Notes under the pieces: model-generated | What the model was told of the DNA's origin: nothing | Database searches by the model: none | The model's input: the letters and a program-made list of their open reading frames with translations, nothing else | Part shown: piece after piece, positions 9,675 to 36,573 of the stretch | How positions within the stretch are numbered: position 1 is the first letter of the stretch | Layout of the letters: each line of letters opens with the position of its first letter | IMG/VR virus record: IMGVR_UViG_3300032322_001765 | Coordinates: 156,868-220,867 of that record | Reading direction: 5' to 3' (one strand) | Length of the DNA stretch: 64,000 bases | Made by a program: the position numbers and the translations under genes

Positions 9675-11069
9675 ATGAAAGATAAAATTCAAAATTACAT
9701 TAAACTAGTAGAAGAAAAAACAGGAACACCCACATTTTGCGCACTACCTTGGATACACTTAGCAACTAGGCCTAACGGCGACGCAAGACTTTGCTGTGTA
9801 ACGAACGCAAGCGGAGCCACAACCGGTGACCACACGGTTGGGCTTGTGAAAAAAGAAAATGGCAAGCCGGCTAATTTTGGAAAAGATTCTTTATTAGACG
9901 CATTTAATAATGATTATATGCGTAGTGTTAGAACAACTATGCTAGCAGGTAATATTCCAGCCAGTTGCACAAAATGCTTTGAAGAAGAAGAAAACGGCGT
10001 AGTAAGTAAAAGGTTATGGGAACTGTATGAATGGAATAGGGACGGGTTAGATTTCAATCAATTAATTAGAGATACGATGGAAGATGGCACTGTACCTCCA
10101 ATTATAAGGTATATGGATTTACGTTTAGGGCACACATGCAATTTAAAATGTGTAATGTGTAGTCCACATGATTCTAGTCGTTGGCTTCAAGATTATGACA
10201 AAGTAATGAATCGTACTACAAGTCAAGTTGTTAAGTTTCAATTAAACTTTGATGCCGAATCATTTAACAATGTTTGGTACGAAAAGCCTACATTTTGGGA
10301 TGAAGTGTTTGAACAGATACCAAACATAACACAATTATATTTCGCAGGTGGCGAACCGCTGATGATTAAAGAACATCGTAAATTTTTAGATGAAATAGTT
10401 AAGCGTGGTTATGCAAAAAACATTAGTTTACGATATAACAGTAACGGAATATTTGTTAATGAAGATATTATAAACGTTTGGAAAGAGTTTAAACAAGTTA
10501 GATATGCTTTTAGTTTAGATGCTATTTTTGATAGAAATCATTATATTCGATATCCGGCTAATTGGGACGAAATTGAAAGTAGTTTGCGTCTAATGGATAA
10601 TACACCTGAACATATTCATTGTGCGATTGCATGTGCTGTACAAGCACTTAACATTAAACACATAGTAGAATTTGCTAAATGGAAAATAAGCCAAAATTTT
10701 AAAAAAATCAATAAATTTAAATTAGATGAATATGAAACTGGTGGTGGAATAATTAACTTGCACTTATTGTACATCCCTACATTTTTGAGTGCTAGAATTT
10801 TACCAAAAGAGGATAAGTTAGAAATTAGAAAACTTATTTTAGATTTTAAACAATGGCTATGGAAAAATTACACACAGGATGATAATTTTTGGCACATTAA
10901 TCCATATGGTTGGAAAAGATGGGAAGCTATTTTAAAATTCGTTGAAGCAGAAGATCATTCTCATTTATTAGATGACTTTAAAGAATATATTAAAAATTTA
11001 GACGCTGTAAGAAATTTAAATTCTAGTCAAATTTTTCCTGAGCTTTCGCATTTATTTGATCAAGTATAA
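9675..11069 (+). CDS. Radical SAM protein with N-terminal SPASM/twitch-like domain
   Basis: CALPW...NGDARLCC, CTKC, CNLKCVMC, FAGGEP. Confidence 0.9.
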   Translation: MKDKIQNYIKLVEEKTGTPTFCALPWIHLATRPNGDARLCCVTNASGATTGDHTVGLVKKENGKPANFGKDSLLDAFNNDYMRSVRTTMLAGNIPASCTKCFEEEENGVVSKRLWELYEWNRDGLDFNQLIRDTMEDGTVPPIIRYMDLRLGHTCNLKCVMCSPHDSSRWLQDYDKVMNRTTSQVVKFQLNFDAESFNNVWYEKPTFWDEVFEQIPNITQLYFAGGEPLMIKEHRKFLDEIVKRGYAKNISLRYNSNGIFVNEDIINVWKEFKQVRYAFSLDAIFDRNHYIRYPANWDEIESSLRLMDNTPEHIHCAIACAVQALNIKHIVEFAKWKISQNFKKINKFKLDEYETGGGIINLHLLYIPTFLSARILPKEDKLEIRKLILDFKQWLWKNYTQDDNFWHINPYGWKRWEAILKFVEAEDHSHLLDDFKEYIKNLDAVRNLNSSQIFPELSHLFDQV

Positions 11070-11799
11070 CCTTCGCAAATTTTCTATGCCAATTAGGACT
11101 AGGACTAGCACCGTCTCTAGCCGTGTCATTGCCAACAGTTTTCTCATCAGTTGAATCCATATACAAATTATACGGTACTGTATATAAGTCTACGTTATAC
11201 ACTTGACGGACTAACTCTACCATATGTGTATTTTTGTCTCTATTGTACTTGCAAGATGTTTTATCAATGCCAAAAAAATACCCATCATACGGTGGTTTTG
11301 AATATGCAGTAACTGCCTCATGATGGTGGTCTAAGAACACTTCTCTACGCACATCTTGTGGCCACATAATAATAACACTTAGTTTTTTACATTTTGGTAA
11401 AAAATATGGTACTGTGCAAGATACCATTCTAGCAATTGTATCTGGTGCAGCTTTAGCAATTGCTAAATTAAGTATTCTTATATTTGGCAAACTGCGTTCG
11501 ATGACTCTAAGAAATATATCACGATCGGCTATTCCTGTTCCAGCTGTGGAACTATTCCCAAACCCCAAAAATAATTCATCATATTGATGATATGATTCTT
11601 CAAATTCTTTTTCTCTATAACCTAAAGAGTTTACAGTGTAAACAATATCATCACTATCAAATCTTGCATTTTTAGGATTATCAGGGCTCTCAGGAAATAG
11701 ATTGCTTGCCCATTTAAATGTAGTGCCCGCTACTTTTTCCATAGGACTGGCTGCGATCCATGCGGGAGGAATATGAGGATAAAAATATTTATTAGCCAT
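11023..11799 (-). CDS. SGNH-hydrolase-like protein
   Basis: NSLGYR, FGNSSTAGTG, NLA block. Confidence 0.45.
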   Translation of the reverse strand: MANKYFYPHIPPAWIAASPMEKVAGTTFKWASNLFPESPDNPKNARFDSDDIVYTVNSLGYREKEFEESYHQYDELFLGFGNSSTAGTGIADRDIFLRVIERSLPNIRILNLAIAKAAPDTIARMVSCTVPYFLPKCKKLSVIIMWPQDVRREVFLDHHHEAVTAYSKPPYDGYFFGIDKTSCKYNRDKNTHMVELVRQVYNVDLYTVPYNLYMDSTDEKTVGNDTARDGASPSPNWHRKFAKVILDQINAKAQEKFD

Positions 11800-12700
11800 T
11801 TTTTACCTTTGTTAATGGAATGTCAGACGCACAAGTACAAAAATCCCTAGTGCAAATTATAGGGTCTATGGGTAATTTAAAATCATCTTTGTATATATTT
11901 CCTAAACTACCTCCAACTCTACACGTAGCACGATGCACTTCACCGTCCCAGTTAATCATCAAACTTTCTAAACCTGCGTTACAGCTCCAACCCTTATATT
12001 TATTAAAGTGTTTTTTAATAATATCATTGGCGTGCATTTTAATATTGTCATCAATAATACTATTGGGTTCAACAGTAGCATCTTTACTTAATATCCAATC
12101 TAAATCATTTTGATCGTAGCGCATATCATCAAATATATTATGATCATCATTTGTCCAACGAATTCTACGAATCGTGTACGGTACGTTGTAAACCTCTAAC
12201 CTTTGAGTTGCGATTCTAACTTCTTTCATTTTATCAGGATGAGCCATAATATTAATCATACAAGGTTTGCGCATGCCTGGCTCTACATCACTTGCTGCGT
12301 AACGTAATATTGTGTCTAATACTCTTTTCCAGTCTTTTTCAAAATGCAGACTAAACACAATATGATTTACTGGCAATCTAAAATAATAAATCGGACTTCT
12401 TGTTCCATTAGTTGTTACATTTATCCATTTAATGTCTTTGTGAACGCAATATTGAACCAATTCTTCAAAATCAGGATGTACTGTAGGTTCTCCGCCTGTA
12501 AAACTAAGTCGTATAGGCTTACCCAATATTACTAGTTTGTCTACCGTTGCCTTTAGTACCTCTATGTCAGTGTGCGGGCTATTATTGTCATGTATACTAC
12601 TAGGACAATAACTACAATCATAGTTACAACGTTTACCTAAGTTCCATTCAACCTTAATGCTGTCTTGATGATGCCAACGACTTGTTATTTTTTGCATCAT
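11792..12700 (-). CDS. Radical SAM protein with C-terminal twitch-like Cys cluster
   Basis: CNYDCSYC, FTGGEP, TTNG; C-terminal CNAG...CRV...CTRDFCTC. Confidence 0.9.
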   Translation of the reverse strand: MMQKITSRWHHQDSIKVEWNLGKRCNYDCSYCPSSIHDNNSPHTDIEVLKATVDKLVILGKPIRLSFTGGEPTVHPDFEELVQYCVHKDIKWINVTTNGTRSPIYYFRLPVNHIVFSLHFEKDWKRVLDTILRYAASDVEPGMRKPCMINIMAHPDKMKEVRIATQRLEVYNVPYTIRRIRWTNDDHNIFDDMRYDQNDLDWILSKDATVEPNSIIDDNIKMHANDIIKKHFNKYKGWSCNAGLESLMINWDGEVHRATCRVGGSLGNIYKDDFKLPIDPIICTRDFCTCASDIPLTKVKNG

Positions 12701-13617
12701 AATATTGATCTTATTTGAGCATGGTCAATCGACATTTCGTGATATTTATTGTCATTATAAAACTTTAAATTTTTGACAGTTACATTATCACCTAAGATAT
12801 CTTTATTCCACATCAATTTGCATAGATGATTTGGTATATACCAATCTCCAACATTATTGTGGTAATCTAAAAGAGTTTGATCAATTATTAATTTACCTAA
12901 TACATATCTACCTAATGATAGTTTGTTTAAGTCATGCAATGGGATATTAAATTTGCACTGTTTTGCCCACCGGTAAAAGAAAATTTCACTAGCCTTTGGA
13001 AAATTATATTCGGGTTTAAAAAATAACAAAGTTTCTGAACTAATTGTATTTTGGGCTGCTAACTCTGTATAATCATCATCGTCCGTAGACAAGTCTAACC
13101 AATCTTTGCCTAAAGTGCCGTAACCTAAAATTAAATCGCCCCACTTATTATTAGATTCTAGCCATATTTTATATTCTTCTTTTATGGGTATGTATTGTTC
13201 ACTATTTGCAGAATAGAATACTATATTCGAATTGTATTCAGAATATTTACTGTTAATCTTATTTTCTAAAACATGTATTAATTTATTCAATGTAGATAAT
13301 GTATCGTCATTGGATTCGTTAGTTAATTTGACTAGTAAACTATGCGTTTTATTTAAATCAGTTTTGGTAAAATTTTTAGGAATCTCTTTAATATTAATTG
13401 TTGTACAGATGTCATTTGCTAATCTTAATACCTTGTCAGTTGGCGTATTCATTTGAATACCTGTATTATATTCACTAGTTTCTAATTGTATCTGTTGCCA
13501 TATATGCTGTACAGGATTATCAATGAGTTGATAATTCAATTTTAGATCACCTACACGACAACTTATAGTTATTTCTAAGGTGTTGTAACCTTCTATATTT
13601 TGAAAAATCTCTTTCAT
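12697..13617 (-). CDS. Hypothetical protein
   Basis: 306-aa ORF with ATGA-type overlaps to both neighbours. Confidence 0.7.
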   Translation of the reverse strand: MKEIFQNIEGYNTLEITISCRVGDLKLNYQLIDNPVQHIWQQIQLETSEYNTGIQMNTPTDKVLRLANDICTTINIKEIPKNFTKTDLNKTHSLLVKLTNESNDDTLSTLNKLIHVLENKINSKYSEYNSNIVFYSANSEQYIPIKEEYKIWLESNNKWGDLILGYGTLGKDWLDLSTDDDDYTELAAQNTISSETLLFFKPEYNFPKASEIFFYRWAKQCKFNIPLHDLNKLSLGRYVLGKLIIDQTLLDYHNNVGDWYIPNHLCKLMWNKDILGDNVTVKNLKFYNDNKYHEMSIDHAQIRSIL

Positions 13618-14876
13618 ATGTAATCCTTAAATTCCGGAGTCACCTCTAAAAAACTCTGTTTTCTAGTATTATCCAATCGCATATTGAAATTAATTGTATC
13701 TACCCAAAGATGGCTCTCATCTTTTGCTGTTAGAAAGTTCAAAACGCCATTTATTTGATTTAATGTCAACTCATATAACATCGGGTGTTTTTTAACCATT
13801 TTAAAATCTTGCAGTCTTTCAGATACAAGTTTAAGTTTAGAACTAGCAATGTTTTTTAATTGCTCAGGTAATACTTGTATACTTAAACAATTTGGATATC
13901 TAACCATATTAGTATAGAAAACAATTTCTAACTCATCTAAGAAATACTCAATCATTTCGTCTAATATTAATATGTTAGATATTTGAACAGCTACAGCTCC
14001 TACTATTCGATTAATATTAGTAATACTTTGAACTTCTTTAATATTCTTAATTAATATATCCCACTCAGCATTACCTCGAATGTATTCATAAGAATCTTTC
14101 ATGCCATCTATACTGACATTTAATGCAACGCTTTTAAAATAAGGCCAATATTCATATATATTACGATTTCCCTTACCTAACATTGTTAAATTTGTGGCGT
14201 ATTTAATTTCAATTTGATGTCCATATGGTTTGAGCATATTTAATATGCGATAATGCTGCGGATCCATCAAAGGTTCACCTCCTGCAAACTCTACTCGCCT
14301 AAAGTATGGTAAATTTTTTTCTAAGCTAGACCACCAATTGGGATTGTCTTCAAATTTATCTAATAGCGGCTTGTTTTCTAAATTATGATCTTCCACTAAT
14401 TGATATATAACTTTACCGGATTCTTTATAAAAGTCTTTAATTTCTGCCCAGTCATTCCAGCTAGTGCTATCGCCGGGATGACACATCCTGCATTTTAAAT
14501 TACATAGATTATTCAGCTTTAATTCCATAGTAGGAATTTTAAAAGGCATGGTCATTGTCGGATGAAGATCATCAAATGCATTTGGGTAAAGTTTTATACG
14601 GGCTTCTGGTATCTCACCCTTAATATGTCGTTGACGTAAACTTTCTACACCTTGGTCTTCTAAGCTGAAGCAAGGTTCGCATTCTGGTGGACGTTCTCCG
14701 GACAAAACTTGAGAACGTATTCTTCTCATCGTATGGTTATTCCATATTTCTTCTAAAGTATTATCCTGTATATTACCAATTGGATGACTGCGGCAACACA
14801 CTTGTATGGCGCCATCTTCTCTTGTTGCTAATCCGGTAAAAGGATGCATACAAAATGTTTTACTATTACATTGCAT
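13614..14876 (-). CDS. Radical SAM protein with N-terminal SPASM/twitch-like domain; paralog of 9675..11069
   Basis: CMHPF...DGAIQVCC, CEPC, CNLKCRMC, FAGGEP. Confidence 0.9.
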   Translation of the reverse strand: MQCNSKTFCMHPFTGLATREDGAIQVCCRSHPIGNIQDNTLEEIWNNHTMRRIRSQVLSGERPPECEPCFSLEDQGVESLRQRHIKGEIPEARIKLYPNAFDDLHPTMTMPFKIPTMELKLNNLCNLKCRMCHPGDSTSWNDWAEIKDFYKESGKVIYQLVEDHNLENKPLLDKFEDNPNWWSSLEKNLPYFRRVEFAGGEPLMDPQHYRILNMLKPYGHQIEIKYATNLTMLGKGNRNIYEYWPYFKSVALNVSIDGMKDSYEYIRGNAEWDILIKNIKEVQSITNINRIVGAVAVQISNILILDEMIEYFLDELEIVFYTNMVRYPNCLSIQVLPEQLKNIASSKLKLVSERLQDFKMVKKHPMLYELTLNQINGVLNFLTAKDESHLWVDTINFNMRLDNTRKQSFLEVTPEFKDYI

Positions 14877-15600
14877 TACTTATAGCCCAATTTCTTTCTT
14901 TACACCAAAAACATATATCACATGTAGGTACATGTTGATTAGGTATGTATGTTTCATAAGTTATCCCTTCAAATTCACCCTCGCAACTTCTTGTTATAGA
15001 AAATAAGTCTAATAAGTTTCTTTTTCTATATTGTTGAATTACCCAATGTTTCTCAATAAATCTAAATGGGTGTATGGCATATACATTCATGTGCTTCATT
15101 AAACGCAGGTGTTGATTAAATTCAGTAGGATCAATATCTCTTTCTTTCATCCCATCAAAGTTTTTATTTTTTGGATTTCTCGTAACACCATTATAGTAAG
15201 CACTAATTTTATTGTGATAACAAACATATTCACTATACGCACGTATTTGAATATTATCTCCGCTTACTTTTTTACCATATTCGTCCATAAGCACAGGACC
15301 AGTTGCACCATATTCAATATCCGGTGCAATAAAATTTACGTGTCTAGTCCATTCGAACGTTGGAAACTTCTTTGTTAAGTATTCATATACATTTTTTGAA
15401 TCATATTCTTGCCATGGTCTAGTTTTCCACATACGAATATGACTTATGATATGAATTTTCAGATTAGGGTTTTCATTTACTGCAAGTGAACATAATAGAT
15501 ATGCTAATAGCGCCGAATCGGCACCACCACTTAAACTGACAGCGATACTAGGCCATTCTTTATCATAGGGTATGTTAACGCCGTCTATGTTATATTCCAT
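14866..15600 (-). CDS. PP-loop ATPase, QueC-like
   Basis: SLSGGADS PP-loop; TRSCEG...CDICFWC Zn site. Confidence 0.7.
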   Translation of the reverse strand: MEYNIDGVNIPYDKEWPSIAVSLSGGADSALLAYLLCSLAVNENPNLKIHIISHIRMWKTRPWQEYDSKNVYEYLTKKFPTFEWTRHVNFIAPDIEYGATGPVLMDEYGKKVSGDNIQIRAYSEYVCYHNKISAYYNGVTRNPKNKNFDGMKERDIDPTEFNQHLRLMKHMNVYAIHPFRFIEKHWVIQQYRKRNLLDLFSITRSCEGEFEGITYETYIPNQHVPTCDICFWCKERNWAISNAM

Positions 15601-16444
15601 TTTCTTCTAAATAACGAATTAAAGGTGAAACACCGACTGGCATGCCATTTTTTAATGCTAAATAAATGCTTTTTGTTTCAGTTAAATTAAAGTCCTTGCA
15701 AATTGTCTTATATCTATGTTCATGAGTATTCCAAAGGTAATCAGGTACTAGCTCATCTAAAAAATATGAACCAATCATTACTAATGCCTTATTATTCATA
15801 TGGAAATCGTTCATTATTGTAATACTATCGCTATCTTCATTTGACCATCGTAAACCTATTCTGTTCCAACCTAACCCTAATCCTTTACTTAAACTAATAC
15901 CCACCGATTTAATATTTGGGTGATTAAAATCAAATTCTATGTCAGTACATGTTGTAACCCATGCTCCGTCGATATGTACATCAATTTTTTTCTCTGCACA
16001 CTCACTGAGTATATCCTGCATATTATTATGTATAGATCCTATTTGTGGAAATGGCATAGCGATAATTAAAGGCACACCATGTATTAAATTTTTTGGGGTA
16101 ACAAGGTATGATAAGTTTAATCTACTGTGGTATCTGTAGTCATCAACTAGTGTTTGTACCCGATGGTGCATATAAATGTTATCGATAAATTGAGTGCATC
16201 CGTTAATAATATCTATACGGTTAAATTTTTTCAATCCATATAACGAATTACGTTTAGATTCTGATAACCAATTTACAAATCGAAACTTAAATCTATTATA
16301 AACCTCATTACTAATGTCTTTGTCCAAACATCCATGCAACACTTGTTGTATTAGAGTGTCAATTTTTTTATCTGTAAGTGGTTGTGGTCTTTCTATTTCT
16401 AAATACTTACTATCATAATCGGGTGCAATTTTAATTCTATCCAC
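15590..16444 (-). CDS. PLP-dependent fold-type-I-like protein (GTG start)
   Basis: HIDGAW and SLSKG resemble the PLP Asp and Schiff-base Lys motifs. Confidence 0.45.
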   Translation of the reverse strand: MDRIKIAPDYDSKYLEIERPQPLTDKKIDTLIQQVLHGCLDKDISNEVYNRFKFRFVNWLSESKRNSLYGLKKFNRIDIINGCTQFIDNIYMHHRVQTLVDDYRYHSRLNLSYLVTPKNLIHGVPLIIAMPFPQIGSIHNNMQDILSECAEKKIDVHIDGAWVTTCTDIEFDFNHPNIKSVGISLSKGLGLGWNRIGLRWSNEDSDSITIMNDFHMNNKALVMIGSYFLDELVPDYLWNTHEHRYKTICKDFNLTETKSIYLALKNGMPVGVSPLIRYLEENGI

Positions 16445-16467
16445 TGACTATTTACTATAAATATTTC

Positions 16468-17136
16468 ATGCTTTCAAAATTGACTCTTTCTGTAGACGTA
16501 GATAGTTTAGTAAAACAAGTTAGTGAACTTAATTTTGGTAAAAGTTTATCCATTAATTATACCACAGGAAAATTACTTAATGGTCCTTATCTAACGAAAC
16601 CCGAATTTCTAAATACTCCTTTAGGAAATATTTTACAATCTATTGAAAATGTAGGTGAAGCTAGATTATTAAAACTAGAAAGTGGAGAATCTTATACTGC
16701 ACATTCTGACCCAGATGATAGAATACATGTTCCTATCATAACCAATCTATATTCTTATATTATGGATTTGGACAACAATAAAATGTATCATTTGCCTGCT
16801 GATGGATCAGTGTGGTATATGGACACAAGTGTTACACATGTGGCAGCAAACTTTGGAGGTAGAACTAGAATACATTTAAACATTCGAGTGCTACTTCCTA
16901 AATTTAAATCCCCTGGCTACAAATTAACTGTTACAGGAGGCGATTATGATTGGAAACAGGAAGCATATTTTACCTTAATGACTTTTTTTAATAAATCTAT
17001 TAAAGAAAGAATTATTACAGGATTTGAAAAGGTAAACGAAAGAGAAGTTTTATTAAATTGTGATCCAATCGTGCTTAATCCTTACATAAAAAAATTAGAA
17101 GATAAAGGGTTTAGTATATCTTTAAGCGCCACATAA
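16468..17136 (+). CDS. AspH-like Fe(II)/2OG hydroxylase
   Basis: HSDPDDRIHVPI, distal THVAAN...RIHL. Confidence 0.7.
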   Translation: MLSKLTLSVDVDSLVKQVSELNFGKSLSINYTTGKLLNGPYLTKPEFLNTPLGNILQSIENVGEARLLKLESGESYTAHSDPDDRIHVPIITNLYSYIMDLDNNKMYHLPADGSVWYMDTSVTHVAANFGGRTRIHLNIRVLLPKFKSPGYKLTVTGGDYDWKQEAYFTLMTFFNKSIKERIITGFEKVNEREVLLNCDPIVLNPYIKKLEDKGFSISLSAT

Positions 17137-18186
17137 ATGACTTTCTACAATTCTGATTTAAAAATTTTAGATATTGAGCCATCTTCTTTTTGTAATGCAA
17201 AATGTCCTCAATGCATGAGAGAATCACAAAATGGTTCCTATGATTTTTTTAATCAAGTGAATTTAACTGATACTTTTTTTGAGATTTTTTTTCCTAAACA
17301 AGTAGTAATAAATTTAGAAATAGTTTCATTTAGTGGAAATGTGGGGGAACCTACAATGAATAAACATTTGATTGATATTATCAGGTGGTTTAGAAAACAA
17401 AACCCTAAAATTTATGTAGAAGTATACACGAACGGCAGCGTACAGAAACCAAAGTTTTGGAGCGAATTAGGAGAAGTTATTGGACATAATGGTAATGTGA
17501 TATTTGCCATCGATGGACTAGAGGATACTAATCATATATACCGTATTGGAGTTAAATGGAACCTGCTAATGCAAAATGCAAAAGCATATATAGAATCTGG
17601 AGCGAAGGCAACATGGCAGTTTATACCTTTTCTACACAACGAGCATCAAGTTGAGTTAGCTAAACAATTAAGTGCAGAAATGGGATTCGATAAATTTAAA
17701 ATTAAAATATCACATAGAGATTTATTAAATCAACAGCAAAATGAAAAAACTAGAGTCTATCCACCAAAAAATCCTATGTATACACATAGCGGAAATAAAC
17801 TAGATTTTACTAATCTTGATGTTACTGAAAACTATTTAAATAGTCTAGATATTAAATGTTATGCCATAGAAAATAGTAACTTATATATTTCTGCTGAAGG
17901 TTTAGTGTTCCCTTGTTGTCACACGGCTAGCATTATACTTTTAGATGATAATATGGTACCTGAACCGTATAGTTGGATTAGGAAAACAAAAAGTCAATTT
18001 AATCTTAATGAAATTAATTTACATAACAATACTCTAGAACAAATTTTAAAATCAGTTACCTTTAATGAAATTAAAGAGTCATGGAACAAAGACATTAGCG
18101 TAGGAAAAAATGCAATATGTGCAGCGATTTGCGGCAAATGTAAAAATAACAAAAGTCTTATAGAAAATCTATTGCACCATGAATAA
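17137..18186 (+). CDS. Radical SAM protein with SPASM/twitch-like C-terminus
   Basis: CNAKCPQC, GNVGEP, TNG; CYA...PCC...CAAIC. Confidence 0.9.
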   Translation: MTFYNSDLKILDIEPSSFCNAKCPQCMRESQNGSYDFFNQVNLTDTFFEIFFPKQVVINLEIVSFSGNVGEPTMNKHLIDIIRWFRKQNPKIYVEVYTNGSVQKPKFWSELGEVIGHNGNVIFAIDGLEDTNHIYRIGVKWNLLMQNAKAYIESGAKATWQFIPFLHNEHQVELAKQLSAEMGFDKFKIKISHRDLLNQQQNEKTRVYPPKNPMYTHSGNKLDFTNLDVTENYLNSLDIKCYAIENSNLYISAEGLVFPCCHTASIILLDDNMVPEPYSWIRKTKSQFNLNEINLHNNTLEQILKSVTFNEIKESWNKDISVGKNAICAAICGKCKNNKSLIENLLHHE

Positions 18187-19117
18187 ACTAATAAAAATAG
18201 AAATAGCTAATCCTAATGCATTGCGTATTAATTTTGTAATGACACGTAGTTGCACCTACGAATGTAGATATTGTCCGGATGATCTACATTACGGTACACA
18301 TAGAGATATAAACTTAAATGATTTAAAACTGTTTCTTAGTAGATTTACGGATAGAAATACGGCCGTTCAATTGACAGGTGGTGAATGCACTACTCATCCA
18401 CAATTTGAGGAAGTTATAAAATTAATTAAAGACTTTAATTATAATGTACTAGTGGATTCTAACAGTGTTAGGACATTGCGCTTCTACGATGAAGTAAAAC
18501 ATTTAGTAGATAATTGGTGCATAACATTACATCCTAGTCAACATAAATTAGATTTAGAAAAATTAAAATTATTATCACAACATTCTTTTCTAGTGATTTA
18601 TGTTATGATGGATCCTAATTATTGGGAGATATCATTAGACTGGTTTGATCAAATATCAAAATTAAAAGATTTAAAAGTAACACCAATCCGAGTTATGAAC
18701 AATTGGGGAGGTGCAAATTTTCACGCTAATTACAGTGACGAACAATTAGAGTATTTGTCAAAGGCAGAATCTAAATGGCTTTTTACTGTTGAACGAGAAA
18801 CAGAATTAAGAAAAACTCACATGTGGTTAGCGGATACAGAATCTATAGCAACAGACACTACTGGAAACAGGGTTACACTAGATCCATTTAAAATGATACG
18901 CACAGGCACAAACAATTTTTATGGTTGGCAGTGTAAAGCCGGTAATGAATCAATATGCATATTTGATGACGGCAAAGCCATATGGGCAAATTGTGGGATT
19001 AAAAAATTTAACCATTACTTAGAGTTGACTCCTGAAATAATGGCTGAACCACTGAAATGTAATTTTTTAGCTTGTTCATGTGCTACTGATATTCGAGCCT
19101 CTAAGTCAAAGAATTAG
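18179..19117 (+). CDS. Radical SAM protein with twitch-like C-terminus
   Basis: CTYECRYC, LTGGE; CKAG...NCG...CNFLACSC. Confidence 0.9.
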   Translation: MNKLIKIEIANPNALRINFVMTRSCTYECRYCPDDLHYGTHRDINLNDLKLFLSRFTDRNTAVQLTGGECTTHPQFEEVIKLIKDFNYNVLVDSNSVRTLRFYDEVKHLVDNWCITLHPSQHKLDLEKLKLLSQHSFLVIYVMMDPNYWEISLDWFDQISKLKDLKVTPIRVMNNWGGANFHANYSDEQLEYLSKAESKWLFTVERETELRKTHMWLADTESIATDTTGNRVTLDPFKMIRTGTNNFYGWQCKAGNESICIFDDGKAIWANCGIKKFNHYLELTPEIMAEPLKCNFLACSCATDIRASKSKN

Positions 19118-20186
19118 TTTCTATCCACTGATCATTGGGTTGACTTATATCTACATTTTTAAATTCACCGCATACTCTGGCACAGGTAATTAATTTTTCT
19201 TCATTCCATTTTTTGTGCCAAATATTTTGCCAAATTTCAGAATCAATCACATTTTTTATTCCGTTTAGTGCATTAAGTTTTTCTACACCACCAAAATCTT
19301 CAATTAGTTTAGTGTATTGATTTTTTATATCTTCGCTTACATTATGATTGATATATTCAGGATCATAGTATGTATAGGGTATGGAACTTACCCAACAACA
19401 AGGAAGTATGGTTTTGTATGCGTCAATGTAGATTTCTTTAAGATTTAAAACATGGCAGTTAATTTTTGCCTCAGCTATAAGTTGTTTATAAGAATTAATT
19501 ACCTCTTTTGGCATAAACTTAATAGTAGTTTCAGTTGGGGGTTCAATTGTATGTGTATAGTTTCCTTCTTTATCTACAACATCGTATTTTGGTTCTACTA
19601 AAAAGCGTGAACTATTTTTTACAACAAATTTTGAGAAACCTAAACTTTTGGCTACTACCCTACATTCTTCTGTTTGATGCTCATTGTGTTTAAATTTTAT
19701 AAATGTCCATTCGGCGATTCCCCCTGCATCAATAAAAGCTTTTGCATTTTTTATTACAGTATTGTAATTAGTGCCTATCCTATATAATGAATGCGTATCA
19801 ACTAATCCGTCAAGTGCGAAATGAACACAGTGATCTACAGGAAGTGCCTTAGCTAAATCTATCCACCATGACGGCTTTCTAGCTCCGCCATTGGTGTGTA
19901 TGGCAATTCGTACATTTGGATTCACATGTTTGATGTACACACACATTTCTATTAGGTCATCATGCAGCATAGGATCACCAAAATTGCCGCAAAAATATAT
20001 ACATCGGACTAAGTTTAAAATTTCAGGAGAGATGATCTTTTTAAACTCAATTAGTGTCCACTGAGTTAATTTTAAATATGGATTAGGCAACCCACCGTGA
20101 TGATTTCTGGCACACATGGGGCACCTTGCCTGACAATTATTAGTTAGCTCTATGTGAATAGATTTTAATTCATTAAATTTAAACAT
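19101..20186 (-). CDS. Radical SAM protein; paralog of 17137..18186
   Basis: CQARCPMC, GNFGDP, TNG; CHV...PCC...CARVC. Confidence 0.9.
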   Translation of the reverse strand: MFKFNELKSIHIELTNNCQARCPMCARNHHGGLPNPYLKLTQWTLIEFKKIISPEILNLVRCIYFCGNFGDPMLHDDLIEMCVYIKHVNPNVRIAIHTNGGARKPSWWIDLAKALPVDHCVHFALDGLVDTHSLYRIGTNYNTVIKNAKAFIDAGGIAEWTFIKFKHNEHQTEECRVVAKSLGFSKFVVKNSSRFLVEPKYDVVDKEGNYTHTIEPPTETTIKFMPKEVINSYKQLIAEAKINCHVLNLKEIYIDAYKTILPCCWVSSIPYTYYDPEYINHNVSEDIKNQYTKLIEDFGGVEKLNALNGIKNVIDSEIWQNIWHKKWNEEKLITCARVCGEFKNVDISQPNDQWIETNSLT

Positions 20187-24481: not shown

Positions 24482-24557
24482 GGTAGAGTAGCATAGCGGC
24501 TAATGCGCCACCTTCATACGGTGTTTATCGTCAGTTCGAGTCTGACCTCTACTACCA
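24482..24557 (+). tRNA. tRNA with CAT anticodon (Met, possibly Ile2)
   Basis: Loop TTCATAC, T arm GTCAG-TTCGAGT-CTGAC, CCA. Confidence 0.85.
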
Positions 24558-24888: not shown

Positions 24889-24966
24889 ACCCTGATGGCG
24901 AAATTGGTAGACGCACCAGTTTAAGGTACTGGATTGTTGAGAGTTCGAGTCTCTCTCAGGGCACCA
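24889..24966 (+). tRNA. Atypical tRNA-Leu(AAG)
   Basis: CCAGT-TTAAGGT-ACTGG; Leu-type D loop; A1.C72 mismatch; short variable region; CCA. Confidence 0.7.
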
Positions 24967-25188: not shown

Positions 25189-25749
25189 ATGTCTGTCTTA
25201 GCTTTGGATATCACAGGAATCCCTAGACAATGGGTTTCAAACGATATTGCAATCACTTACCATGCAAAAGAGATGGTAGCATGGAGTATTGGTGAAATTG
25301 TTGCACGTTATCGTGGTGGCATTCAAAATAATGGCAAAATGAGTTATCTTGAAACTCCTAGTATTATTGCCATTAAAGGACATGGTTTTGATCCTAGCAA
25401 ACATGGCAAAGTTGCACTTACTAATAAAACATTGTTTGGGCGTGACCGTCATGTATGTGCATACTGCGGCGGACATTTTTCGAATTCAAACAACTTAAGT
25501 CGTGACCATATTTTACCTAAAAGCAGAGGTGGTGCAAACAATTGGATGAATGTGGTTACTGCATGTACTCCATGCAATAACAAGAAAGACAACAAAACAT
25601 TGAAAGAGGCACGAATGGAATTGCTTTATGTTCCCTATGAGCCAAATTTCTTTGAAGCAATGATTTTGCAAAATAGAAATATTCTCGCTGATCAAATGGA
25701 ATACTTAATGACAGGTGTACCAAAACATAGCAGAATTTTGTTATCATAA
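25189..25749 (+). CDS. HNH endonuclease
   Basis: RDRHVCAYCG, DHILPKSRGG, NVVTACTPCN. Confidence 0.9.
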   Translation: MSVLALDITGIPRQWVSNDIAITYHAKEMVAWSIGEIVARYRGGIQNNGKMSYLETPSIIAIKGHGFDPSKHGKVALTNKTLFGRDRHVCAYCGGHFSNSNNLSRDHILPKSRGGANNWMNVVTACTPCNNKKDNKTLKEARMELLYVPYEPNFFEAMILQNRNILADQMEYLMTGVPKHSRILLS

Positions 25750-28355: not shown

Positions 28356-28646
28356 TTATTTAGTGAATCGTCTAATATGTGTAGATATAGGAGTATTATA
28401 TTGTTCTGTACCGCGATCACCGCCTACTGTTAAACGTAAGTTTACATCAACGGTTTTTGCGTAATAGTTTACATAATTGGCAATTTTACTACTTGTTGTT
28501 CTAATTAGACAAATACCGGCATTATTACAAACTATGTAGGTAGTTATTCCGAATTCGTCTTTGTCTATGAATAGCATAACATATTTATTAATATTTGGGC
28601 AACTAATAGTTGCATTATTAATTTGTTTGATGTATAATCTATACAT
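28356..28646 (-). CDS. Hypothetical protein
   Basis: 96-aa ORF filling the gap between two tRNAs on the opposite strand. Confidence 0.45.
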   Translation of the reverse strand: MYRLYIKQINNATISCPNINKYVMLFIDKDEFGITTYIVCNNAGICLIRTTSSKIANYVNYYAKTVDVNLRLTVGGDRGTEQYNTPISTHIRRFTK

Positions 28647-28657: not shown

Positions 28658-28734
28658 GCCTCTGTAGCTCAATCGGTCAGAGCAGCGGACTCATAATCCG
28701 TTGGTTAGGGGTTCGAGTCCCTTCGGAGGCACCA
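28658..28734 (+). tRNA. tRNA with CAT anticodon, probably Ile2 (lysidine)
   Basis: GCGGA-CTCATAA-TCCGT, paired 1:72, CCA. Confidence 0.85.
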
Positions 28735-29033: not shown

Positions 29034-29207
29034 ATGGCACAATTAAAAATCTTCATTAACGACAAACTATACAAAACAGTACCATTAGATACTGAAAAAT
29101 ATGAGCCTTCTTGGTATTGGCCTCAAATTAAGGCTGATAAAGAAGCCGGTTTACTAAATTCTTTTAACATTGAAGAATCAATGAAAGTAGAATTTAGAAA
29201 AATATAA
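29034..29207 (+). CDS. Hypothetical protein
   Basis: MAQLKIFINDK; TAAATA 8 nt upstream; ORF-track start overlaps a tRNA. Confidence 0.6.
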   Translation: MAQLKIFINDKLYKTVPLDTEKYEPSWYWPQIKADKEAGLLNSFNIEESMKVEFRKI

Positions 29208-29285
29208 ACCATAATAGTTTGTATACTTTCAATATTGCAATGATATGCTCACGCATATCAAAAAAGCAAGCCTATTTTTTTAGCT

Positions 29286-29293
29286 TATAAATA
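29286..29293 (+). promoter_or_regulatory. T4-type late promoter
   Basis: Perfect TATAAATA upstream of the fMet-like tRNA. Confidence 0.7.
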
Positions 29294-29311
29294 AGTCGTA
29301 GGACATTAAGA

Positions 29312-29384
29312 CGCGGGTTAGGGAAGAGGTCATCCCGTTAGGCTCATAACCTGAAGATCGTTGGTTCAAATCCAGCACCCGCAT
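29312..29384 (+). tRNA. Initiator-like tRNA-fMet(CAT), atypical, no encoded CCA
   Basis: CGCGGGT/ACCCGCA with C1.A72; TTAGG-CTCATAA-CCTGA; flanked by 10-bp extension stem. Confidence 0.8.
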
Positions 29385-29402
29385 CTTAGTGTCTTACAAT
29401 AA

Positions 29403-29481
29403 CCGGGTGTAGCTTAGTCTGGCTTAAAGCGCCTGCTTTGGGAGCAGGAGATCGTGAGTTCGAATCCCACTTCCCGGACCA
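29403..29481 (+). tRNA. tRNA-Pro(TGG)
   Basis: CCTGC-TTTGGGA-GCAGG, CCA. Confidence 0.95.
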
Positions 29482-29500
29482 ATTCTTTTTAAGGTGATAT

Positions 29501-32979: not shown

Positions 32980-33046
32980 AGTAGGTGAAGCAATTTTTTA
33001 TAGTTTAGTAGCAGTTTTTATTGTGGCATTTTTACTTACTATTTAA
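32972..33046 (+). CDS. Small hydrophobic peptide (24 aa)
   Basis: MYKVGEAIFYSLVAVFIVAFLLTI; AAGGA SD-like site. Confidence 0.4.
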   Translation: MYKVGEAIFYSLVAVFIVAFLLTI

Positions 33047-33049
33047 TAT

Positions 33050-33358
33050 TGTTGTATGAAACAATCCGAAACAGGTTCTGGACGGCGGTTCGATTCCGCC
33101 CATCTCCACCAAATGCAATCTTGGGATGATTATTTTCCGCCTTTGAATTTGTGGAACTATAGTATCAGTTGGCAATGGAAGATTTCATTTGATGGGGATG
33201 ATCAGGTCTCGACAGGGTCAAGAGTACGAGAGTGGACAACACGGTAGGCGATGACCGTAAATCAAGCAAAACTATAACTGCAAACGCAGCTAATGATGAG
33301 GTATACGCTCTAGCAGCGTGATCTCCGGGGCAACTATGCCTTGTTACCAAAAATAGTT
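33050..33358 (+). ncRNA. ssrA: Circularly permuted (two-piece) tmRNA; tag ANAANDEVYALAA
   Basis: 3' end GGTTCGATTCC...CATCTCCACCA (ends 33111) precedes 5' end GGGGATG (33194); G3.U70; tag ORF 33280-33321; outer ends approximate. Confidence 0.9.
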
Positions 33359-33359
33359 T

Positions 33360-33384
33360 AAAAGGCTACTTCGGTAGCCTTTTT
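33360..33384 (+). terminator. Intrinsic terminator
   Basis: AAAAGGCTAC-TTCG-GTAGCCTTTTT. Confidence 0.9.
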
Positions 33385-33403
33385 CCATTATAAATATACT
33401 ATT

Positions 33404-33988
33404 ATGATAGTTTATATACACGGCGCCAGCGCAACTAAAGATAGCTTTTCTTACATTAGACAATTTGTTAGAGATAATATAGAGTTACCTGATATCGCAT
33501 TAGAGTATAACAGTAGTGATGGGTTTGATTATAATATAGGCACTATGTTTGGTAGATTGGATGATGCTGAAAAACTATTTTTCGTTTCGCATAGTTTAGG
33601 TGGCATATACGCATTGCATTTAGCAAATCATTATAAAGATAGAACAATCGGTGGCGTTTCACTAAGTACTCCATACGGTGGATGTAGACAAGCAGATTTT
33701 GCTAGATATTTTTTACCTTTTAATAAGTTAATGAAAGATATTGGAACAATGTCAGATCCAATGATAGAGGCAAAGCGTTTACCTGCTCCTAAAAATTGGA
33801 CTAATGTTGTCACAACAAGAGGAGATAGTCCTTGGATACAAGAACCAAATGATGGAGTGGTTACTATTGAAAGCATGAAGTATCGTGCAGATTTTGAATT
33901 GGTTGAGGCAAATATTAACCATTATGAAGTTGTATTAAATCCAAACATTGTTGAACTTATTTTAGATAGAATTAAAAAAGCAATTTAA
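33404..33988 (+). CDS. Alpha/beta hydrolase
   Basis: YIHG, SHSLGG nucleophile elbow, NDGVV, distal H. Confidence 0.8.
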   Translation: MIVYIHGASATKDSFSYIRQFVRDNIELPDIALEYNSSDGFDYNIGTMFGRLDDAEKLFFVSHSLGGIYALHLANHYKDRTIGGVSLSTPYGGCRQADFARYFLPFNKLMKDIGTMSDPMIEAKRLPAPKNWTNVVTTRGDSPWIQEPNDGVVTIESMKYRADFELVEANINHYEVVLNPNIVELILDRIKKAI

Positions 33989-34030: not shown

Positions 34031-34083
34031 ATTCTAACTTCTAAATATTTTTGTACACATGTACATTTTATCGGAGACAGAGT

Positions 34084-35106
34084 ATGAAAAAAATATTTGC
34101 ATTATTGGCGTTTGTGTCAACATTTGCATCAGCAGCAGAATTCACCGGAGCAGGAGCAACATTCCCGTTCCCAATCTATGCTAAGTGGGCTGAAGCATAC
34201 AAAGCACAAACTGGCATTGGTCTAAATTATCAATCAATTGGTAGTGGCGGTGGTATTCGTCAAATCAAAGCAAAGACGGTTGACTTTGGCGCAAGTGATA
34301 TGCCATTGAAAAAAGAAGAACTTGACAAAGAAGGTCTTGTACAATTTCCAGCAATCATCGGTGGTGTTGTACCAGTATTCAACCTAGACGGTATTGATGC
34401 TGGTAAATTAAAACTTACTCCAGATGTGATTGCTAATATTCATTTAGGTAAAATTAACAAATGGAATGACAAAGCAATTGCTGAATTAAATCCAGGAGTT
34501 GCTCTTCCTGCTATGAACATTACTGTAGTTCATCGTGCAGACGGTTCAGGTACTACATTTATCTGGACAAACTTTTTAGGCAAAGCAAATGCTGAATTTC
34601 AAAAAACAGTAGGCGAAGGCACAGCAGTTAAATGGCCAGTTGGTGTAGGCGGTAAAGGCAACGAAGGTGTAGCAGCACAAGTGCAAAGAATCAAAGGTGC
34701 ATTTGGTTATGTTGAGTATGCTTATGCTAAAAGAAACAAGATTCCTTATGCAGCGTTGAAAAATCGTGATGGTAACTTTGTACTACCAGATGATACTACA
34801 TTCAAAGCAGCCGCAGCTAATGCTGATTGGAACAATGCGCCAGGGATGTATTTGTTACTCACATGGCAGACAGGTAAAGATGCATGGCCAGCAACAGGTG
34901 CAAGTTTCATTCTAATGCACAAGCAACAGGCAGATACATTAACGGGTCGTGCAGTTCTCAAGTTCTTTGACTGGTCATACAAGAATGGTGGCCAAATGTC
35001 AACTGAGTTAGAGTATGTTCACATGCCAGCTGATGTAATTAAATTAGTTCAGGAAAATTGGAAGAAGGATTTCCGTGGTCCTGATGGTAACCCAATTTGG
35101 AAATAA
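34084..35106 (+). CDS. pstS: Phosphate ABC transporter substrate-binding protein PstS
   Basis: Signal peptide; GAGATFP, YQSIGSGGG, FGASD, RADGSGTT, GKGNEGV; GGAGA SD. Confidence 0.95.
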   Translation: MKKIFALLAFVSTFASAAEFTGAGATFPFPIYAKWAEAYKAQTGIGLNYQSIGSGGGIRQIKAKTVDFGASDMPLKKEELDKEGLVQFPAIIGGVVPVFNLDGIDAGKLKLTPDVIANIHLGKINKWNDKAIAELNPGVALPAMNITVVHRADGSGTTFIWTNFLGKANAEFQKTVGEGTAVKWPVGVGGKGNEGVAAQVQRIKGAFGYVEYAYAKRNKIPYAALKNRDGNFVLPDDTTFKAAAANADWNNAPGMYLLLTWQTGKDAWPATGASFILMHKQQADTLTGRAVLKFFDWSYKNGGQMSTELEYVHMPADVIKLVQENWKKDFRGPDGNPIWK

Positions 35107-35110
35107 ACAC

Positions 35111-35139
35111 TTGACAACCGTTAACACTGATGATACAAT
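35111..35139 (+). promoter_or_regulatory. Sigma70-type promoter overlapping an 11-bp inverted repeat
   Basis: TTGACA-17nt-TACAAT; AACCGTTAACA/TGTTAACGGTT plus T tract. Confidence 0.7.
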
Positions 35140-35166
35140 GTTAACGGTTTTTTATAAGGACACACA

Positions 35167-36573
35167 ATGAAAACATTAGGTAAATTAACTTTGGCTATTT
35201 CTTTAGCCTTCTCAGTTCCAGCATATGCTGATGAATATTTGAGTACATTAAATATTTTGCGAGACAAAGGTATCATTACAAAACAAGAGTATGATACTAA
35301 AGTACGTGATTATGAAGAAAAAGCAGAAAACAAAAAATTTGCAGAGCAACGAATCGACAAAGATGTTAGCGATTCAGTCAAATTTAGACAAGCAAGAGCA
35401 AACGACGGATCAGTTACAGAAAACGGATTTGGACTTAAATCCAAAGATGGAAACACGACTGCCCAATTTACAGGTCGATTACATATGGACTATCGTCAGT
35501 ACGACCCCAATTATGGTACAGGTCAAACCACGGATTCGTATCAGAACCTAGCAGAAGTTCGTCGTGCTAGATTTGGCGTACGTGGTCAATTTCAAAAAGA
35601 TTTCAAGTATCAACTACTTGCAAACTTTGGTAATGACGTAGGTGCTTCTGCTACTTCCAGTACCGCAGATGAGATGTGGGTTAACTATGCAGCCAATCCT
35701 GAAATGCAATTTCAGTTTGGTTTATTCAAAATGCCATTCAGCTTAGAGCAATTAACAAGTTCTAATAATATTGATTTTATGGAGCGTAGTTTAATTGGTA
35801 ACACTGATGGTGAGTTCATTCCTGCAAAAGAAACTGGATTCATGGTTCATGGTATACCTAAACCAGGTCTATTGTATCAAGTAGCATTAAGCCGTGGTCG
35901 TGCAAACAAAGATGCAACTAACGATGGTTTTGACTATATTGGTCGTGTAGTAACAAACGTTGCTGAACTACAAGGTAGCAAAGCATATGTATTACATTTA
36001 GGCGCTGCATACAGTATGGGTGATATCAAAGGTGGTGTTACACCAGCTAGTGGTAGAACAGAGGCTCGCACACAGTCAGCATGGTTTACAGGTCCTGCAT
36101 TATCTGGTACCACGACAAGAACTCGCCAAGGATTAGAAGCAGCATTTGCTTACAATGGTTTAAAGTTACAAGGCGAACAGTTTAATTTCAAGTATGATCC
36201 TACAACAGGTTCCGATCAAGAAATTAAAGGTTACTACGTACAAGCATTGTATAACTTAACAGGCGAAAGTCACAATTATAAAGACGGTATCTTTAACTGG
36301 ATTAAACCAAACAATCCAACAGATAAAGGTGGTCGCGGTGCATGGCAAGTTGGTGTGCGTATGAGTGAGTTTGATGCAAGTGGTATCACTGTTGTAACAG
36401 GCAAATCTAATCGTGCTACTGCCATGACATACGGAATTACTTGGTTTGCAACTGACAATTTACGCTTCATGCTCAACTATGTTGACACAAAGTTTGATTC
36501 GTTAGTAGGAAGTTCAGGTAGCCGTGTAAATGGTGACAGAGCAGTTATGTTTAGAAGCCAATTAAGTTTCTAA
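35167..36573 (+). CDS. Phosphate-selective porin, OprO/OprP family
   Basis: Signal peptide; GRLHMD, RRARFGVRG, GLFKMPFSLEQLTSS...FMERS, RYSE-like RMSEFD, C-terminal F. Confidence 0.85.
   Translation: MKTLGKLTLAISLAFSVPAYADEYLSTLNILRDKGIITKQEYDTKVRDYEEKAENKKFAEQRIDKDVSDSVKFRQARANDGSVTENGFGLKSKDGNTTAQFTGRLHMDYRQYDPNYGTGQTTDSYQNLAEVRRARFGVRGQFQKDFKYQLLANFGNDVGASATSSTADEMWVNYAANPEMQFQFGLFKMPFSLEQLTSSNNIDFMERSLIGNTDGEFIPAKETGFMVHGIPKPGLLYQVALSRGRANKDATNDGFDYIGRVVTNVAELQGSKAYVLHLGAAYSMGDIKGGVTPASGRTEARTQSAWFTGPALSGTTTRTRQGLEAAFAYNGLKLQGEQFNFKYDPTTGSDQEIKGYYVQALYNLTGESHNYKDGIFNWIKPNNPTDKGGRGAWQVGVRMSEFDASGITVVTGKSNRATAMTYGITWFATDNLRFMLNYVDTKFDSLVGSSGSRVNGDRAVMFRSQLSF

What the first reader, a model, noticed from the sequence alone, without database searches (positions are those of the whole stretch)
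29286..29393. Late-promoter-driven initiator-like tRNA with an extended acceptor helix and no CCA
Seen: the only tRNA here without encoded CCA. It has the fMet C1.A72 mismatch but U73 and only two G-C pairs in the anticodon stem (canonical fMet has three). Its flanks GACATTAAGA (29302-29311) and TCTTAGTGTC (29384-29393) extend the acceptor stem by 10 bp, and a perfect TATAAATA lies 8 nt upstream. Inference: a late, specially processed initiator (or initiator mimic) that could bias initiation toward phage late mRNAs; see the leaderless finding.
Basis: partly seen in the sequence, partly recalled or inferred. Interest (0 to 1): 0.6.

Follow-up and report, generated by a model that had tools for sequence, protein, structure and literature searches.

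The report
Phage initiator tRNA locked in hairpin
The only start-of-translation (initiator) tRNA gene of this large uncultured phage has lost its built-in CCA tail, and its two flanks pair into a 14-bp helix that sequence evolution has preserved in at least nine phage lineages, so this tRNA is probably made as a locked precursor that needs an unusual release step.

Summary
tRNA-Met(CAU) at 29312-29384 is the only initiator-type tRNA in the window. It has C1xA72, an AGG/CCU anticodon stem and U73. It is also the only one of 27 tRNAs without a templated CCA.

Its flanks continue the acceptor stem by 14 bp, not 10 (29298-29311 with 29384-29397). The other 26 tRNAs extend by 0-1 bp.

Pattern scans of viral and metagenome contigs found nine distinct members of this module, with at least five different tRNA bodies. 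All have a 1:72 mismatch, U73, C74, no CCA and a 12-18 bp leader-trailer helix. The helix shows compensatory changes, an invariant G.U wobble, and 25 G.U against 2 A.C cells, so it is an RNA helix on the sense strand. In every one of these contigs the other tRNAs all template CCA. Sister tRNAs with almost the same body carry CCA and have no helix.

TATAAATA is five-fold depleted in the window. A syntenic relative keeps it at the same spacing, but only two of the nine lineages have it.

Best reading: a real initiator tRNA made as a locked precursor that needs a double-strand-specific release step and then CCA addition. Maturation, timing and any bias towards leaderless late mRNAs are untested. 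I class it as a new variant of a known kind.

The parts
29286..29293 (+). TATAAATA box of the T4 late-promoter type. If the box spans -13 to -6, the predicted start is 29299.
   Evidence: Exact match. Only 3 sites occur in 64 kb against 14.3 +/- 3.9 expected. L204 keeps the box at the same spacing to the helix base while the rest of the spacer has diverged. Promoter geometry is from PMC2988020. Seven of the nine lineages lack the exact box.
29298..29311 (+). 5' leader arm of the leader-trailer helix (GTAGGACATTAAGA).
   Evidence: Pairs with 29384-29397 in the minimum-energy fold (z = -6.8). All nine members keep the helix, with compensatory changes.
29312..29384 (+). Initiator-type tRNA-Met(CAU), positions 1-73: C1xA72, G2:C71, C3:G70, G11:C24, AGG/CCU anticodon stem, U73.
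   Evidence: ARAGORN and Rfam calls; cloverleaf fold. The features were compared with the bacterial initiator tables in PMC5143459.
29384..29397 (+). 3' trailer arm (TCTTAGTGTCTTAC). It takes the place of the CCA, and U73 and C74 are its first two paired bases.
   Evidence: Sister tRNAs with nearly the same body have U73-CCA or A73-CCA at this position.
29300..29302 (+). Conserved AGG box at the helix base. It pairs with CUU at 29393-29395. G29301.U29394 is a wobble pair in all nine members.
   Evidence: columns 11-13 with 107-109. In the members found the 5' side was not constrained by the search pattern.
29403..29481 (+). tRNA-Pro(UGG) with templated CCA, starting 5 nt after the helix. RNase P cleavage at its 5' end would define the end of the initiator's trailer.

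Best explanation
This is a genuine phage initiator tRNA gene from a phage-specific tRNA-fMet-like lineage. Its templated CCA has been replaced by a trailer complementary to the 5' leader. The primary transcript therefore folds into a cloverleaf whose acceptor stem continues, across the retained 1:72 mismatch, into a stable 13-14 bp leader-trailer helix worth -14 to -20 kcal/mol.

Shown: the helix exists, is specific to the initiator, is conserved at the RNA level, and always goes with loss of CCA.

Inferred: RNase P is slowed even by 2-bp acceptor extensions, and the 3' end is buried. The precursor should therefore be inert until a double-strand-specific cut opens the helix. Host RNase III or a phage nuclease that reads the conserved AGG/CUU G.U box are the candidates. 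RNase P and 3' trimming would then finish the ends, and a CCA-adding enzyme would build C(C)A onto U73 or C74.

The module would thus gate or order the supply of functional initiator tRNA. In the window lineage it would do so from a late promoter, and extra initiator tRNA would favour the phage's leaderless late mRNAs.
For: **Specific to the initiator**
- In the window this tRNA extends by 14 bp and the 26 others by 0-1 bp.
- It is the only tRNA without CCA in all nine contigs; every other tRNA listed there ends in CCA.
- None of 105 other phage initiator-like tRNAs extends beyond 4 bp.
- A scan anchored only on the 3' side gave a bimodal result: 0-3 bp for every CCA-type hit, against 8 bp plus one mismatch plus 4 bp in L204 and 13-18 bp in the other CCA-less hits.

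**An RNA-level helix**
- RNAalifold keeps all 14 pairs.
- 97.7% of cells are paired and 16 pairs change on both sides; 0 of 500 shuffles reach this, and slid registers give at most 50% pairing.
- G.U cells outnumber A.C cells 25 to 2, and one G.U is invariant.

**Still a working tRNA**
- The 1:72 mismatch is kept as C.A or U.U inside an otherwise perfect helix.
- The tRNA bodies are 90-100% identical within group A, while their helices are only 64-82% identical.
- They are near-identical to CCA-bearing sister genes.

**Precedents**
- Extended acceptor stems slow RNase P (PMC10731613).
- E. coli RNase III takes part in T4 tRNA maturation (PMC4810235).
- E. coli RNase III releases the metY initiator tRNA (reference 20 in PMC6511841).
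- From my own knowledge, not checked in the literature tools: T4 has CCA-less tRNAs that need 3' trimming and CCA addition.
Against: - There are no expression or end-mapping data, so maturation is not shown.
- I found no RNase III, RNase Z, CCA-adding enzyme or formyltransferase gene among about 40 window ORFs scanned. The rest of the 220-kb contig was not available.
- Bacterial initiators are the tRNA class that most often templates CCA (PMC5143459), so the selective gain from losing it is unexplained.
- The late promoter is present in only 2 (perhaps 3) of 9 lineages, so late timing cannot be the general purpose.
- U73 is unusual for an initiator, although CCA-type sisters have it too.
- Five of the nine members were found with patterns that fixed TC and CTT on the 3' arm. 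Conservation of those 3' bases is therefore partly built in by the search.
Confidence: 0.5

Rival explanations
1. An acceptor-blocked initiator mimic that is never matured. The stable hairpin-tRNA would act as a decoy or sponge, for example for a host nuclease or toxin that targets the initiator anticodon arm or acceptor end, or as a binder of MetRS, the 30S P-site or initiation factors.
For: The 3' end is buried and there is no CCA. The helix is very stable. The anticodon arm is strongly conserved. The module is limited to the initiator, which is a known target of tRNA-directed toxins (general knowledge; the tRNA-targeting defence papers listed).
Against: A decoy would not need the 1:72 mismatch or G2:C71/C3:G70 (the determinants for formylation of a free acceptor end), yet they are kept. 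No second, CCA-bearing initiator was seen in the stretches held for these phages. The tRNA bodies are as constrained as those of their CCA-type sisters.
Confidence: 0.2
2. A protective storage form. The helix shields both ends of the precursor from exonucleases, from 5'-end-dependent decay, or from defences that act on the acceptor end. It then opens without a dedicated nuclease (breathing or a helicase), and ordinary RNase P, exonucleases and CCA addition follow.
For: The predicted late transcript starts at the helix base, giving a nearly blunt duplex with a 5'-triphosphate end. The helix abuts the neighbouring tRNAs, so the normal RNase P cut at tRNA-Pro in the window, and 3'-end processing of tRNA-Cys in L002/L006, would release it intact.
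Against: A helix of -14 to -20 kcal/mol is unlikely to open spontaneously. The invariant G.U and the conserved box point to specific recognition rather than to mere pairing.
Confidence: 0.2
3. A DNA-level inverted repeat, such as a recombination site, the ends of a mobile cassette or a cruciform, that happens to flank the tRNA gene. On this reading it has nothing to do with the RNA.
For: Helix identity and tRNA-body identity are decoupled: L209 against L222 is 60% in the body and 89% in the helix, and the window against L002 is 96% and 64%. That pattern could reflect cassette-like exchange.
Against: Non-Watson-Crick cells are G.U 25 times and A.C twice (p = 6e-6, not corrected for shared ancestry), which fits pairing on the sense-strand RNA only. 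The repeat is in exact register with the acceptor stem in all nine members. No recombinase or transposase gene was seen beside the module; the one neighbour family shared by the group-A loci, and three small ORFs beside the tRNA, have no Pfam or PHROG hit.
Confidence: 0.05
4. Chance complementarity.
For: None beyond the AT-rich composition of the flanks.
Against:: a run of 10 bp or more is expected at about 1e-4, and the helix is conserved with covariation in nine lineages.
Confidence: 0.01

Closest known systems
Bacterial-type initiator tRNA (tRNA-fMet), including phage-encoded copies such as the T5 tRNA-fMet
   Same: CAU anticodon, CUCAUAA loop, 1:72 mismatch (C.A; U.U in relatives), G2:C71, C3:G70, purine11:pyrimidine24, and an AGG/CCU anticodon stem, which is a common natural variant.
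   Different: U73 instead of A73, G11:C24 instead of A11:U24, no templated CCA, and a 14-bp leader-trailer helix. Bacterial initiators are the class that most often templates CCA (PMC5143459).
CCA-less tRNA precursors of phage T4 (Pro, Ser, Ile), which need 3' trimming (RNase BN) and CCA addition before RNase P (own knowledge)
   Same: Phage tRNAs without templated CCA in a host whose tRNAs presumably template it. Maturation follows a forced order in which the 3' end is made first.
   Different: In T4 the affected tRNAs are elongators. No long leader-trailer duplex, and no module conserved across lineages, is known for them.
Leader-trailer helices of bacterial pre-rRNA, and RNase III release of the E. 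coli metY initiator tRNA
   Same: Sequences on either side of a stable RNA pair into a long helix that a double-strand-specific nuclease cuts to release the mature RNA. For metY, RNase III acts next to an initiator tRNA.
   Different: In metY the RNase III site is a separate downstream hairpin. Here the helix is continuous with the acceptor stem and encloses the tRNA itself. Cleavage has not been tested.
tRNA precursors with short acceptor-stem extensions (E. coli G-2 G-1 pairing with RCC; tRNA-His G-1:C73)
   Same: Base -1 pairs with position 73, which extends the acceptor stem and affects RNase P.
   Different: Those extensions are 1-2 bp and involve the CCA itself. This one is 13-14 bp or more and replaces the CCA.

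Membership tests
Bacterial-type initiator tRNA | CAU anticodon in a CUCAUAA loop | tested here: met
Bacterial-type initiator tRNA | No Watson-Crick pair at 1:72 | tested here: met
   C1xA72 in the window and L209; U1xU72 in the other seven members. Both are natural initiator types: C.A in 3392 and U.U in 207 of 4438.
Bacterial-type initiator tRNA | Consecutive G-C pairs at 29-31:39-41 | tested here: met
   The form here is AGG/CCU, with two G-C pairs and A29-U41. It is found in 522 of 4438 initiators but in only 2 elongator Met/kIle genes.
Bacterial-type initiator tRNA | A11:U24 in the D stem | tested here: not met
   The pair is G11:C24. It is purine:pyrimidine like initiators and unlike the C:G of elongators, but G:C occurs in only 3 of 4438 initiators.
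Bacterial-type initiator tRNA | A73 discriminator | tested here: not met
   It is U73, paired with A-1. U73 also occurs in CCA-bearing sisters (L181, L189, L197) and in 12 of 105 phage initiator-like tRNAs.
Bacterial-type initiator tRNA | Methionylation, formylation and IF2/P-site use | not testable with these tools
   This needs biochemistry or tRNA-seq.
RNase III-processed leader-trailer helix | Flanking sequences form a continuous duplex of about two helical turns that encloses the mature RNA | tested here: met
   The stack is 14 bp, a 1x1 mismatch and 6 bp of acceptor stem, and it would stack coaxially on the 5-bp T stem.
RNase III-processed leader-trailer helix | Cleavage by RNase III in vivo or in vitro | not testable with these tools
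   No data. This step rests on inference only.
T4-type late promoter | TATAAATA box about one helical turn upstream of the start site | tested here: met
   Box at 29286-29293. The motif is depleted in the window and conserved in L204.
T4-type late promoter | A phage that encodes gp55/gp33-type late transcription factors | not tested
   None was seen among about 40 window ORFs scanned. The remaining 156 kb of the contig was not available.
T4-type late promoter | Conserved across members of the module | tested here: not met
   The exact box is present in 2 of 9 lineages (window, L204). L213 has TATAAAGA. L002 and L006 follow tRNA-Cys directly.
Other tRNA-like RNAs (bacterial Y RNA/YrlA, tmRNA tRNA-like domain, viral tRNA-like structures) | A match to the family's covariance model | tested here: not met
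   A permissive Rfam scan (E up to 10) of 29200-29500 gave only the tRNA model above noise.

The most novel reading that the evidence does not exclude
The module may be a 'pro-tRNA' switch. On this reading, a clade of aquatic phages makes its only initiator tRNA as an inert hairpin-locked precursor. A dedicated nuclease, host or phage, reads the invariant G.U box and opens it at a set stage of infection. The phage would thereby control when extra initiator tRNA appears and so favour its leaderless late mRNAs. Alternatively, the locked form itself is the active molecule and works as an initiator-tRNA mimic against tRNA-targeting defence.
Probability: 0.25. Interest if true: 0.8.

Novelty: new variant of a known kind. 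Interest (0 to 1): 0.62.

Why it matters
Initiator tRNA supply is a control point of translation, and extra fMet-tRNA selectively boosts leaderless mRNAs. In bacteria the initiator is the tRNA class most likely to carry a templated CCA, which is thought to compensate for its poor 5' processing. This phage clade does the opposite, and does it only for the initiator. It also adds a covarying helix with a conserved wobble box that should block the normal processing enzymes.

If the precursor really is gated, that would be a new way for viruses to time or protect a key translation component. It would also be a natural example of a tRNA held as an inactive precursor. The module has a simple sequence signature that can be searched for in viromes, and it can be tested directly with in vitro processing assays.

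Tried and rejected
- **Close relatives among cultured phages.** None found by blastn, megablast or tblastn against 50,697 phage records. The window matches the uncultured contig IMGVR_UViG_3300032322_001765 at 100%.
- **Two faulty scans.** One viral scan was wasted on a pattern with a spacer one N too long and gave 0 hits; it was corrected. The first broad initiator scan used a D-region gap too short to include this lineage, so it served only as a control set.
- **Host origin of the tRNA.** The body-A pattern hit only 2 MAG contigs among 185,579 species genomes. The lineage looks phage-specific, and no host could be assigned from it.
- **Linked enzyme.** About 40 window ORFs scanned with Pfam or PHROGs showed no RNase III, RNase Z, CCA-adding enzyme, formyltransferase or gp55. 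An all-against-all comparison of ORFs from the fetched loci that hold the module (and 21 kb of the window) gave only one small family limited to group A, with no Pfam or PHROG hit.
- **A general processing module.** The helix-arm motifs occur as a correctly spaced pair only around initiator tRNAs.
- **Other RNA families.** Rfam at a permissive threshold gave nothing besides tRNA.
- **Intrinsic terminator.** No U-run follows the helix, and the terminator scan found no site there.
- **Prior description.** Six of the ten allowed full-text literature searches were run, and none turned up a description of such a module. That does not prove none exists.

Full report
**1. What is in the window**

ARAGORN finds 27 tRNAs and a two-piece tmRNA between 24.1 and 33.4 kb, and Rfam confirms them. 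The window is AT-rich, 31-40% G+C. It matches the uncultured viral contig IMGVR_UViG_3300032322_001765 (220,867 bp) at 100%. It has no close relative among 50,697 deposited phage genomes.

The tRNA under study is at 29312-29384. It reads CGCGGGU / D arm GGGA-AGAGGUCA-UCCC / anticodon arm UUAGG-CUCAUAA-CCUGA / T arm GUUGG-UUCAAAU-CCAGC / ACCCGCA-U. Its features are:

- C1xA72, G2:C71 and C3:G70
- G11:C24
- A29-U41, G30-C40 and G31-C39
- U73

The other two CAU tRNAs (24482-24557 and 28658-28734) have a paired 1:72, C11:G24 and elongator-type anticodon stems. This is therefore the only initiator-type tRNA in the window.

In the tables of Ardell and Hou (PMC5143459), C.A and U.U at 1:72 and the AGG/CCU anticodon stem are all normal initiator variants. 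G11:C24 is rare, and U73 departs from the usual A73 (my own knowledge; N73 is not tabulated there).

**2.

All 26 other tRNAs end in a templated CCA, and this one does not. Its flanks pair over 14 bp, 29298-29311 with 29384-29397, starting with A-1:U73 and G-2:C74. The other 26 tRNAs extend by 0-1 bp. Random position pairs in the window reach 10 bp at about 1e-4.

The minimum-energy fold of 29294-29402 is a cloverleaf on top of this helix, with the 1:72 mismatch as a 1x1 internal loop. Its energy is -44.8 kcal/mol and z = -6.8.

**3. Comparative evidence**

An exact 31-mer from the tRNA body, and then looser patterns, found the same tRNA lineage in about 20 distinct contexts in viral and metagenome contigs.

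- Most copies have a templated CCA (U73-CCA or A73-CCA) and only 0-2 bp of flank pairing.
- Four (window, L002, L006, L204) lack CCA and have a 12-14 bp helix whose sequence differs between them.
- Two further scans, one anchored on both arms and one on the 3' arm only, added L209, L212, L213, L219 and L222. These carry four more tRNA bodies with different D arms, anticodon stems and T stems.
- In one search the result is bimodal. Every CCA-type hit extends 0-3 bp. The CCA-less hits extend 13-18 bp, apart from L204 with 8 bp, one mismatch and 4 more bp.

All nine members share a 1:72 mismatch (C.A twice, U.U seven times), U73, C74 and no CCA. In every one of these contigs, all the other tRNAs listed end in CCA. 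As a control, 105 other phage initiator-like tRNAs never extend beyond 4 bp, although about half of them lack CCA.

**4. The helix is an RNA helix under selection**

On the nine-sequence alignment A3:

- RNAalifold keeps all 14 extension pairs.
- 97.7% of cells are paired and 16 pairs change on both sides. None of 500 column shuffles reaches this.
- Sliding the 3' partner by 1-3 columns drops pairing to 39-50%.
- One extension pair occurs as C-G, U-A and A-U.
- Among non-Watson-Crick cells in the extension, G.U outnumbers A.C by 25 to 2. That is expected for pairing in the sense-strand RNA and not for a DNA inverted repeat.
- G29301.U29394 is a wobble in all nine, inside a conserved 5'-AGG/CUU-3' box at the base. 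GA/UC is conserved at the top.

One caveat applies. The patterns that found five of the members fixed TC and CTT on the 3' arm. The 5' arm was free, and the first four members were found through the tRNA body alone.

The helix adds -14 to -20 kcal/mol to the fold. Helix identity and tRNA-body identity are decoupled. This points to recombination or to a sequence-specific constraint on the helix.

**5. The promoter**

TATAAATA occurs three times in 64 kb against 14.3 expected. All three sites are intergenic and on the + strand.

L204 is a syntenic relative of the window phage. It shares the small ORF upstream, and its spacer cannot be aligned to the window's, except for TATAAATA at the same distance from the helix base. 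If the box spans -13 to -6 (PMC2988020), transcription would start at 29299, the second base of the helix.

The other lineages lack the exact box. L002 and L006 place the helix directly after tRNA-Cys. Late expression is therefore plausible for the window lineage, but it is not a defining property of the module.

In this phage group TATAAATA is often followed by ATG 4-9 nt later: 7 of 11 sites in the window plus eleven relative loci. That leaves no room for a Shine-Dalgarno sequence.

**6. How it most likely works**

The following points are established here or in the literature:

- Even 2-bp acceptor extensions slow bacterial RNase P, because they must be unwound (PMC10731613).
- The C1xA72 mismatch already weakens 5' processing of initiators, and a templated CCA is thought to compensate for this (PMC5143459).
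- Here the CCA is gone and both ends are buried in a stable duplex.
- The tRNA body remains under strong constraint, and the 1:72 mismatch is kept.

From this I infer that the RNA is meant to become a working initiator but cannot enter the normal pathway directly. A double-strand-specific cut must come first. Precedents are RNase III in T4 tRNA maturation (PMC4810235) and RNase III release of the E. coli metY initiator (reference in PMC6511841). RNase P, 3' trimming and CCA addition would follow.

The biological effect would be a gated or delayed supply of initiator tRNA. That supply strongly favours leaderless mRNAs (PMC9031893).

The rival readings cannot be excluded by computation:

- a decoy that is never matured
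- a protective storage form
- a DNA-level inverted repeat, which is disfavoured by the G.U excess and the exact register with the acceptor stem

**7. Comparison and novelty**

The gene passes most of the sequence tests for a bacterial-type initiator, but not A73 or A11:U24, and it lacks the templated CCA that initiators usually have. It resembles the CCA-less precursors of T4 and the leader-trailer helices of rRNA, but it is neither.

The literature searches run here turned up no description of such a module. The tRNA lineage is almost absent from 185,579 bacterial and archaeal species genomes, with only 2 MAG contigs hit.

I class it as a new variant of a known kind: a phage initiator tRNA with a conserved precursor architecture that should block normal processing.

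Noticed in passing
window 16456-16470 and 33389-33406; also L005:3854, L005:10565, L006 (- strand, 1639), L009:4026, L209 (- strand, 801): TATAAATA is followed by ATG only 4-9 nt later at 7 of 11 sites in this phage group, which leaves no room for a Shine-Dalgarno sequence. Late mRNAs may therefore be leaderless or nearly so. The motif is five-fold depleted in the window (3 sites against 14.3 expected).
   Followed up: partly
window 33007-33386: A two-piece (permuted) tmRNA of the betaproteobacterial type, with tag ANAANDEVYALAA. It ends 3 nt before a TATAAATA box, which sits 7 nt before the ATG of ORF 33404-33988.
   Followed up: no
window 25189-25749: An HNH endonuclease ORF (186 aa) sits inside the tRNA array.
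   Followed up: no
window 28356-28646 (- strand); L002:5974-6195; homologues in L006 and L204: A small protein family (73-96 aa) is shared by the tRNA arrays of the four group-A phages that carry the helix module. It has no Pfam or PHROG match. Its co-occurrence with the module may simply reflect relatedness.
   Followed up: partly
alignment A3 (nine members): Helix identity and tRNA-body identity are decoupled. The window against L002 is 96% in the body and 64% in the helix, while L209 against L222 is 60% and 89%. This suggests recombination between bodies and flanks, or sequence-specific selection on the helix.
   Followed up: partly
L009:506-582: The closest relative by the neighbouring 436-aa gene (89% identity) lacks the module. 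It has a different initiator-like tRNA with U1:A72, A73, CCA and a U31.G39 wobble.
   Followed up: partly
window 24889-24966: tRNA-Leu(AAG) shows an A1xC72 mismatch in the ARAGORN register. Several other tRNAs have G1.U72.
   Followed up: no
L002:5701-5793, L006:1181-1273, L181:2871-2960, L189:11568-11659: tRNA-Ile(UAU) genes that are unusually long (90-93 nt) recur next to the initiator in relatives.
   Followed up: no
L204:3490-3545: A tRNA-like remnant with a GGTTCGAGTCC T-arm motif lies in the spacer upstream of the promoter. ARAGORN does not call it.
   Followed up: no
window 698-20186 and 34051-36573: The window holds a dense cluster of radical SAM/SPASM and methyltransferase ORFs. It also holds phosphate-uptake auxiliary genes: PstS at 34051-35106 and a phosphate-selective porin at 35167-36573.
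   Followed up: no
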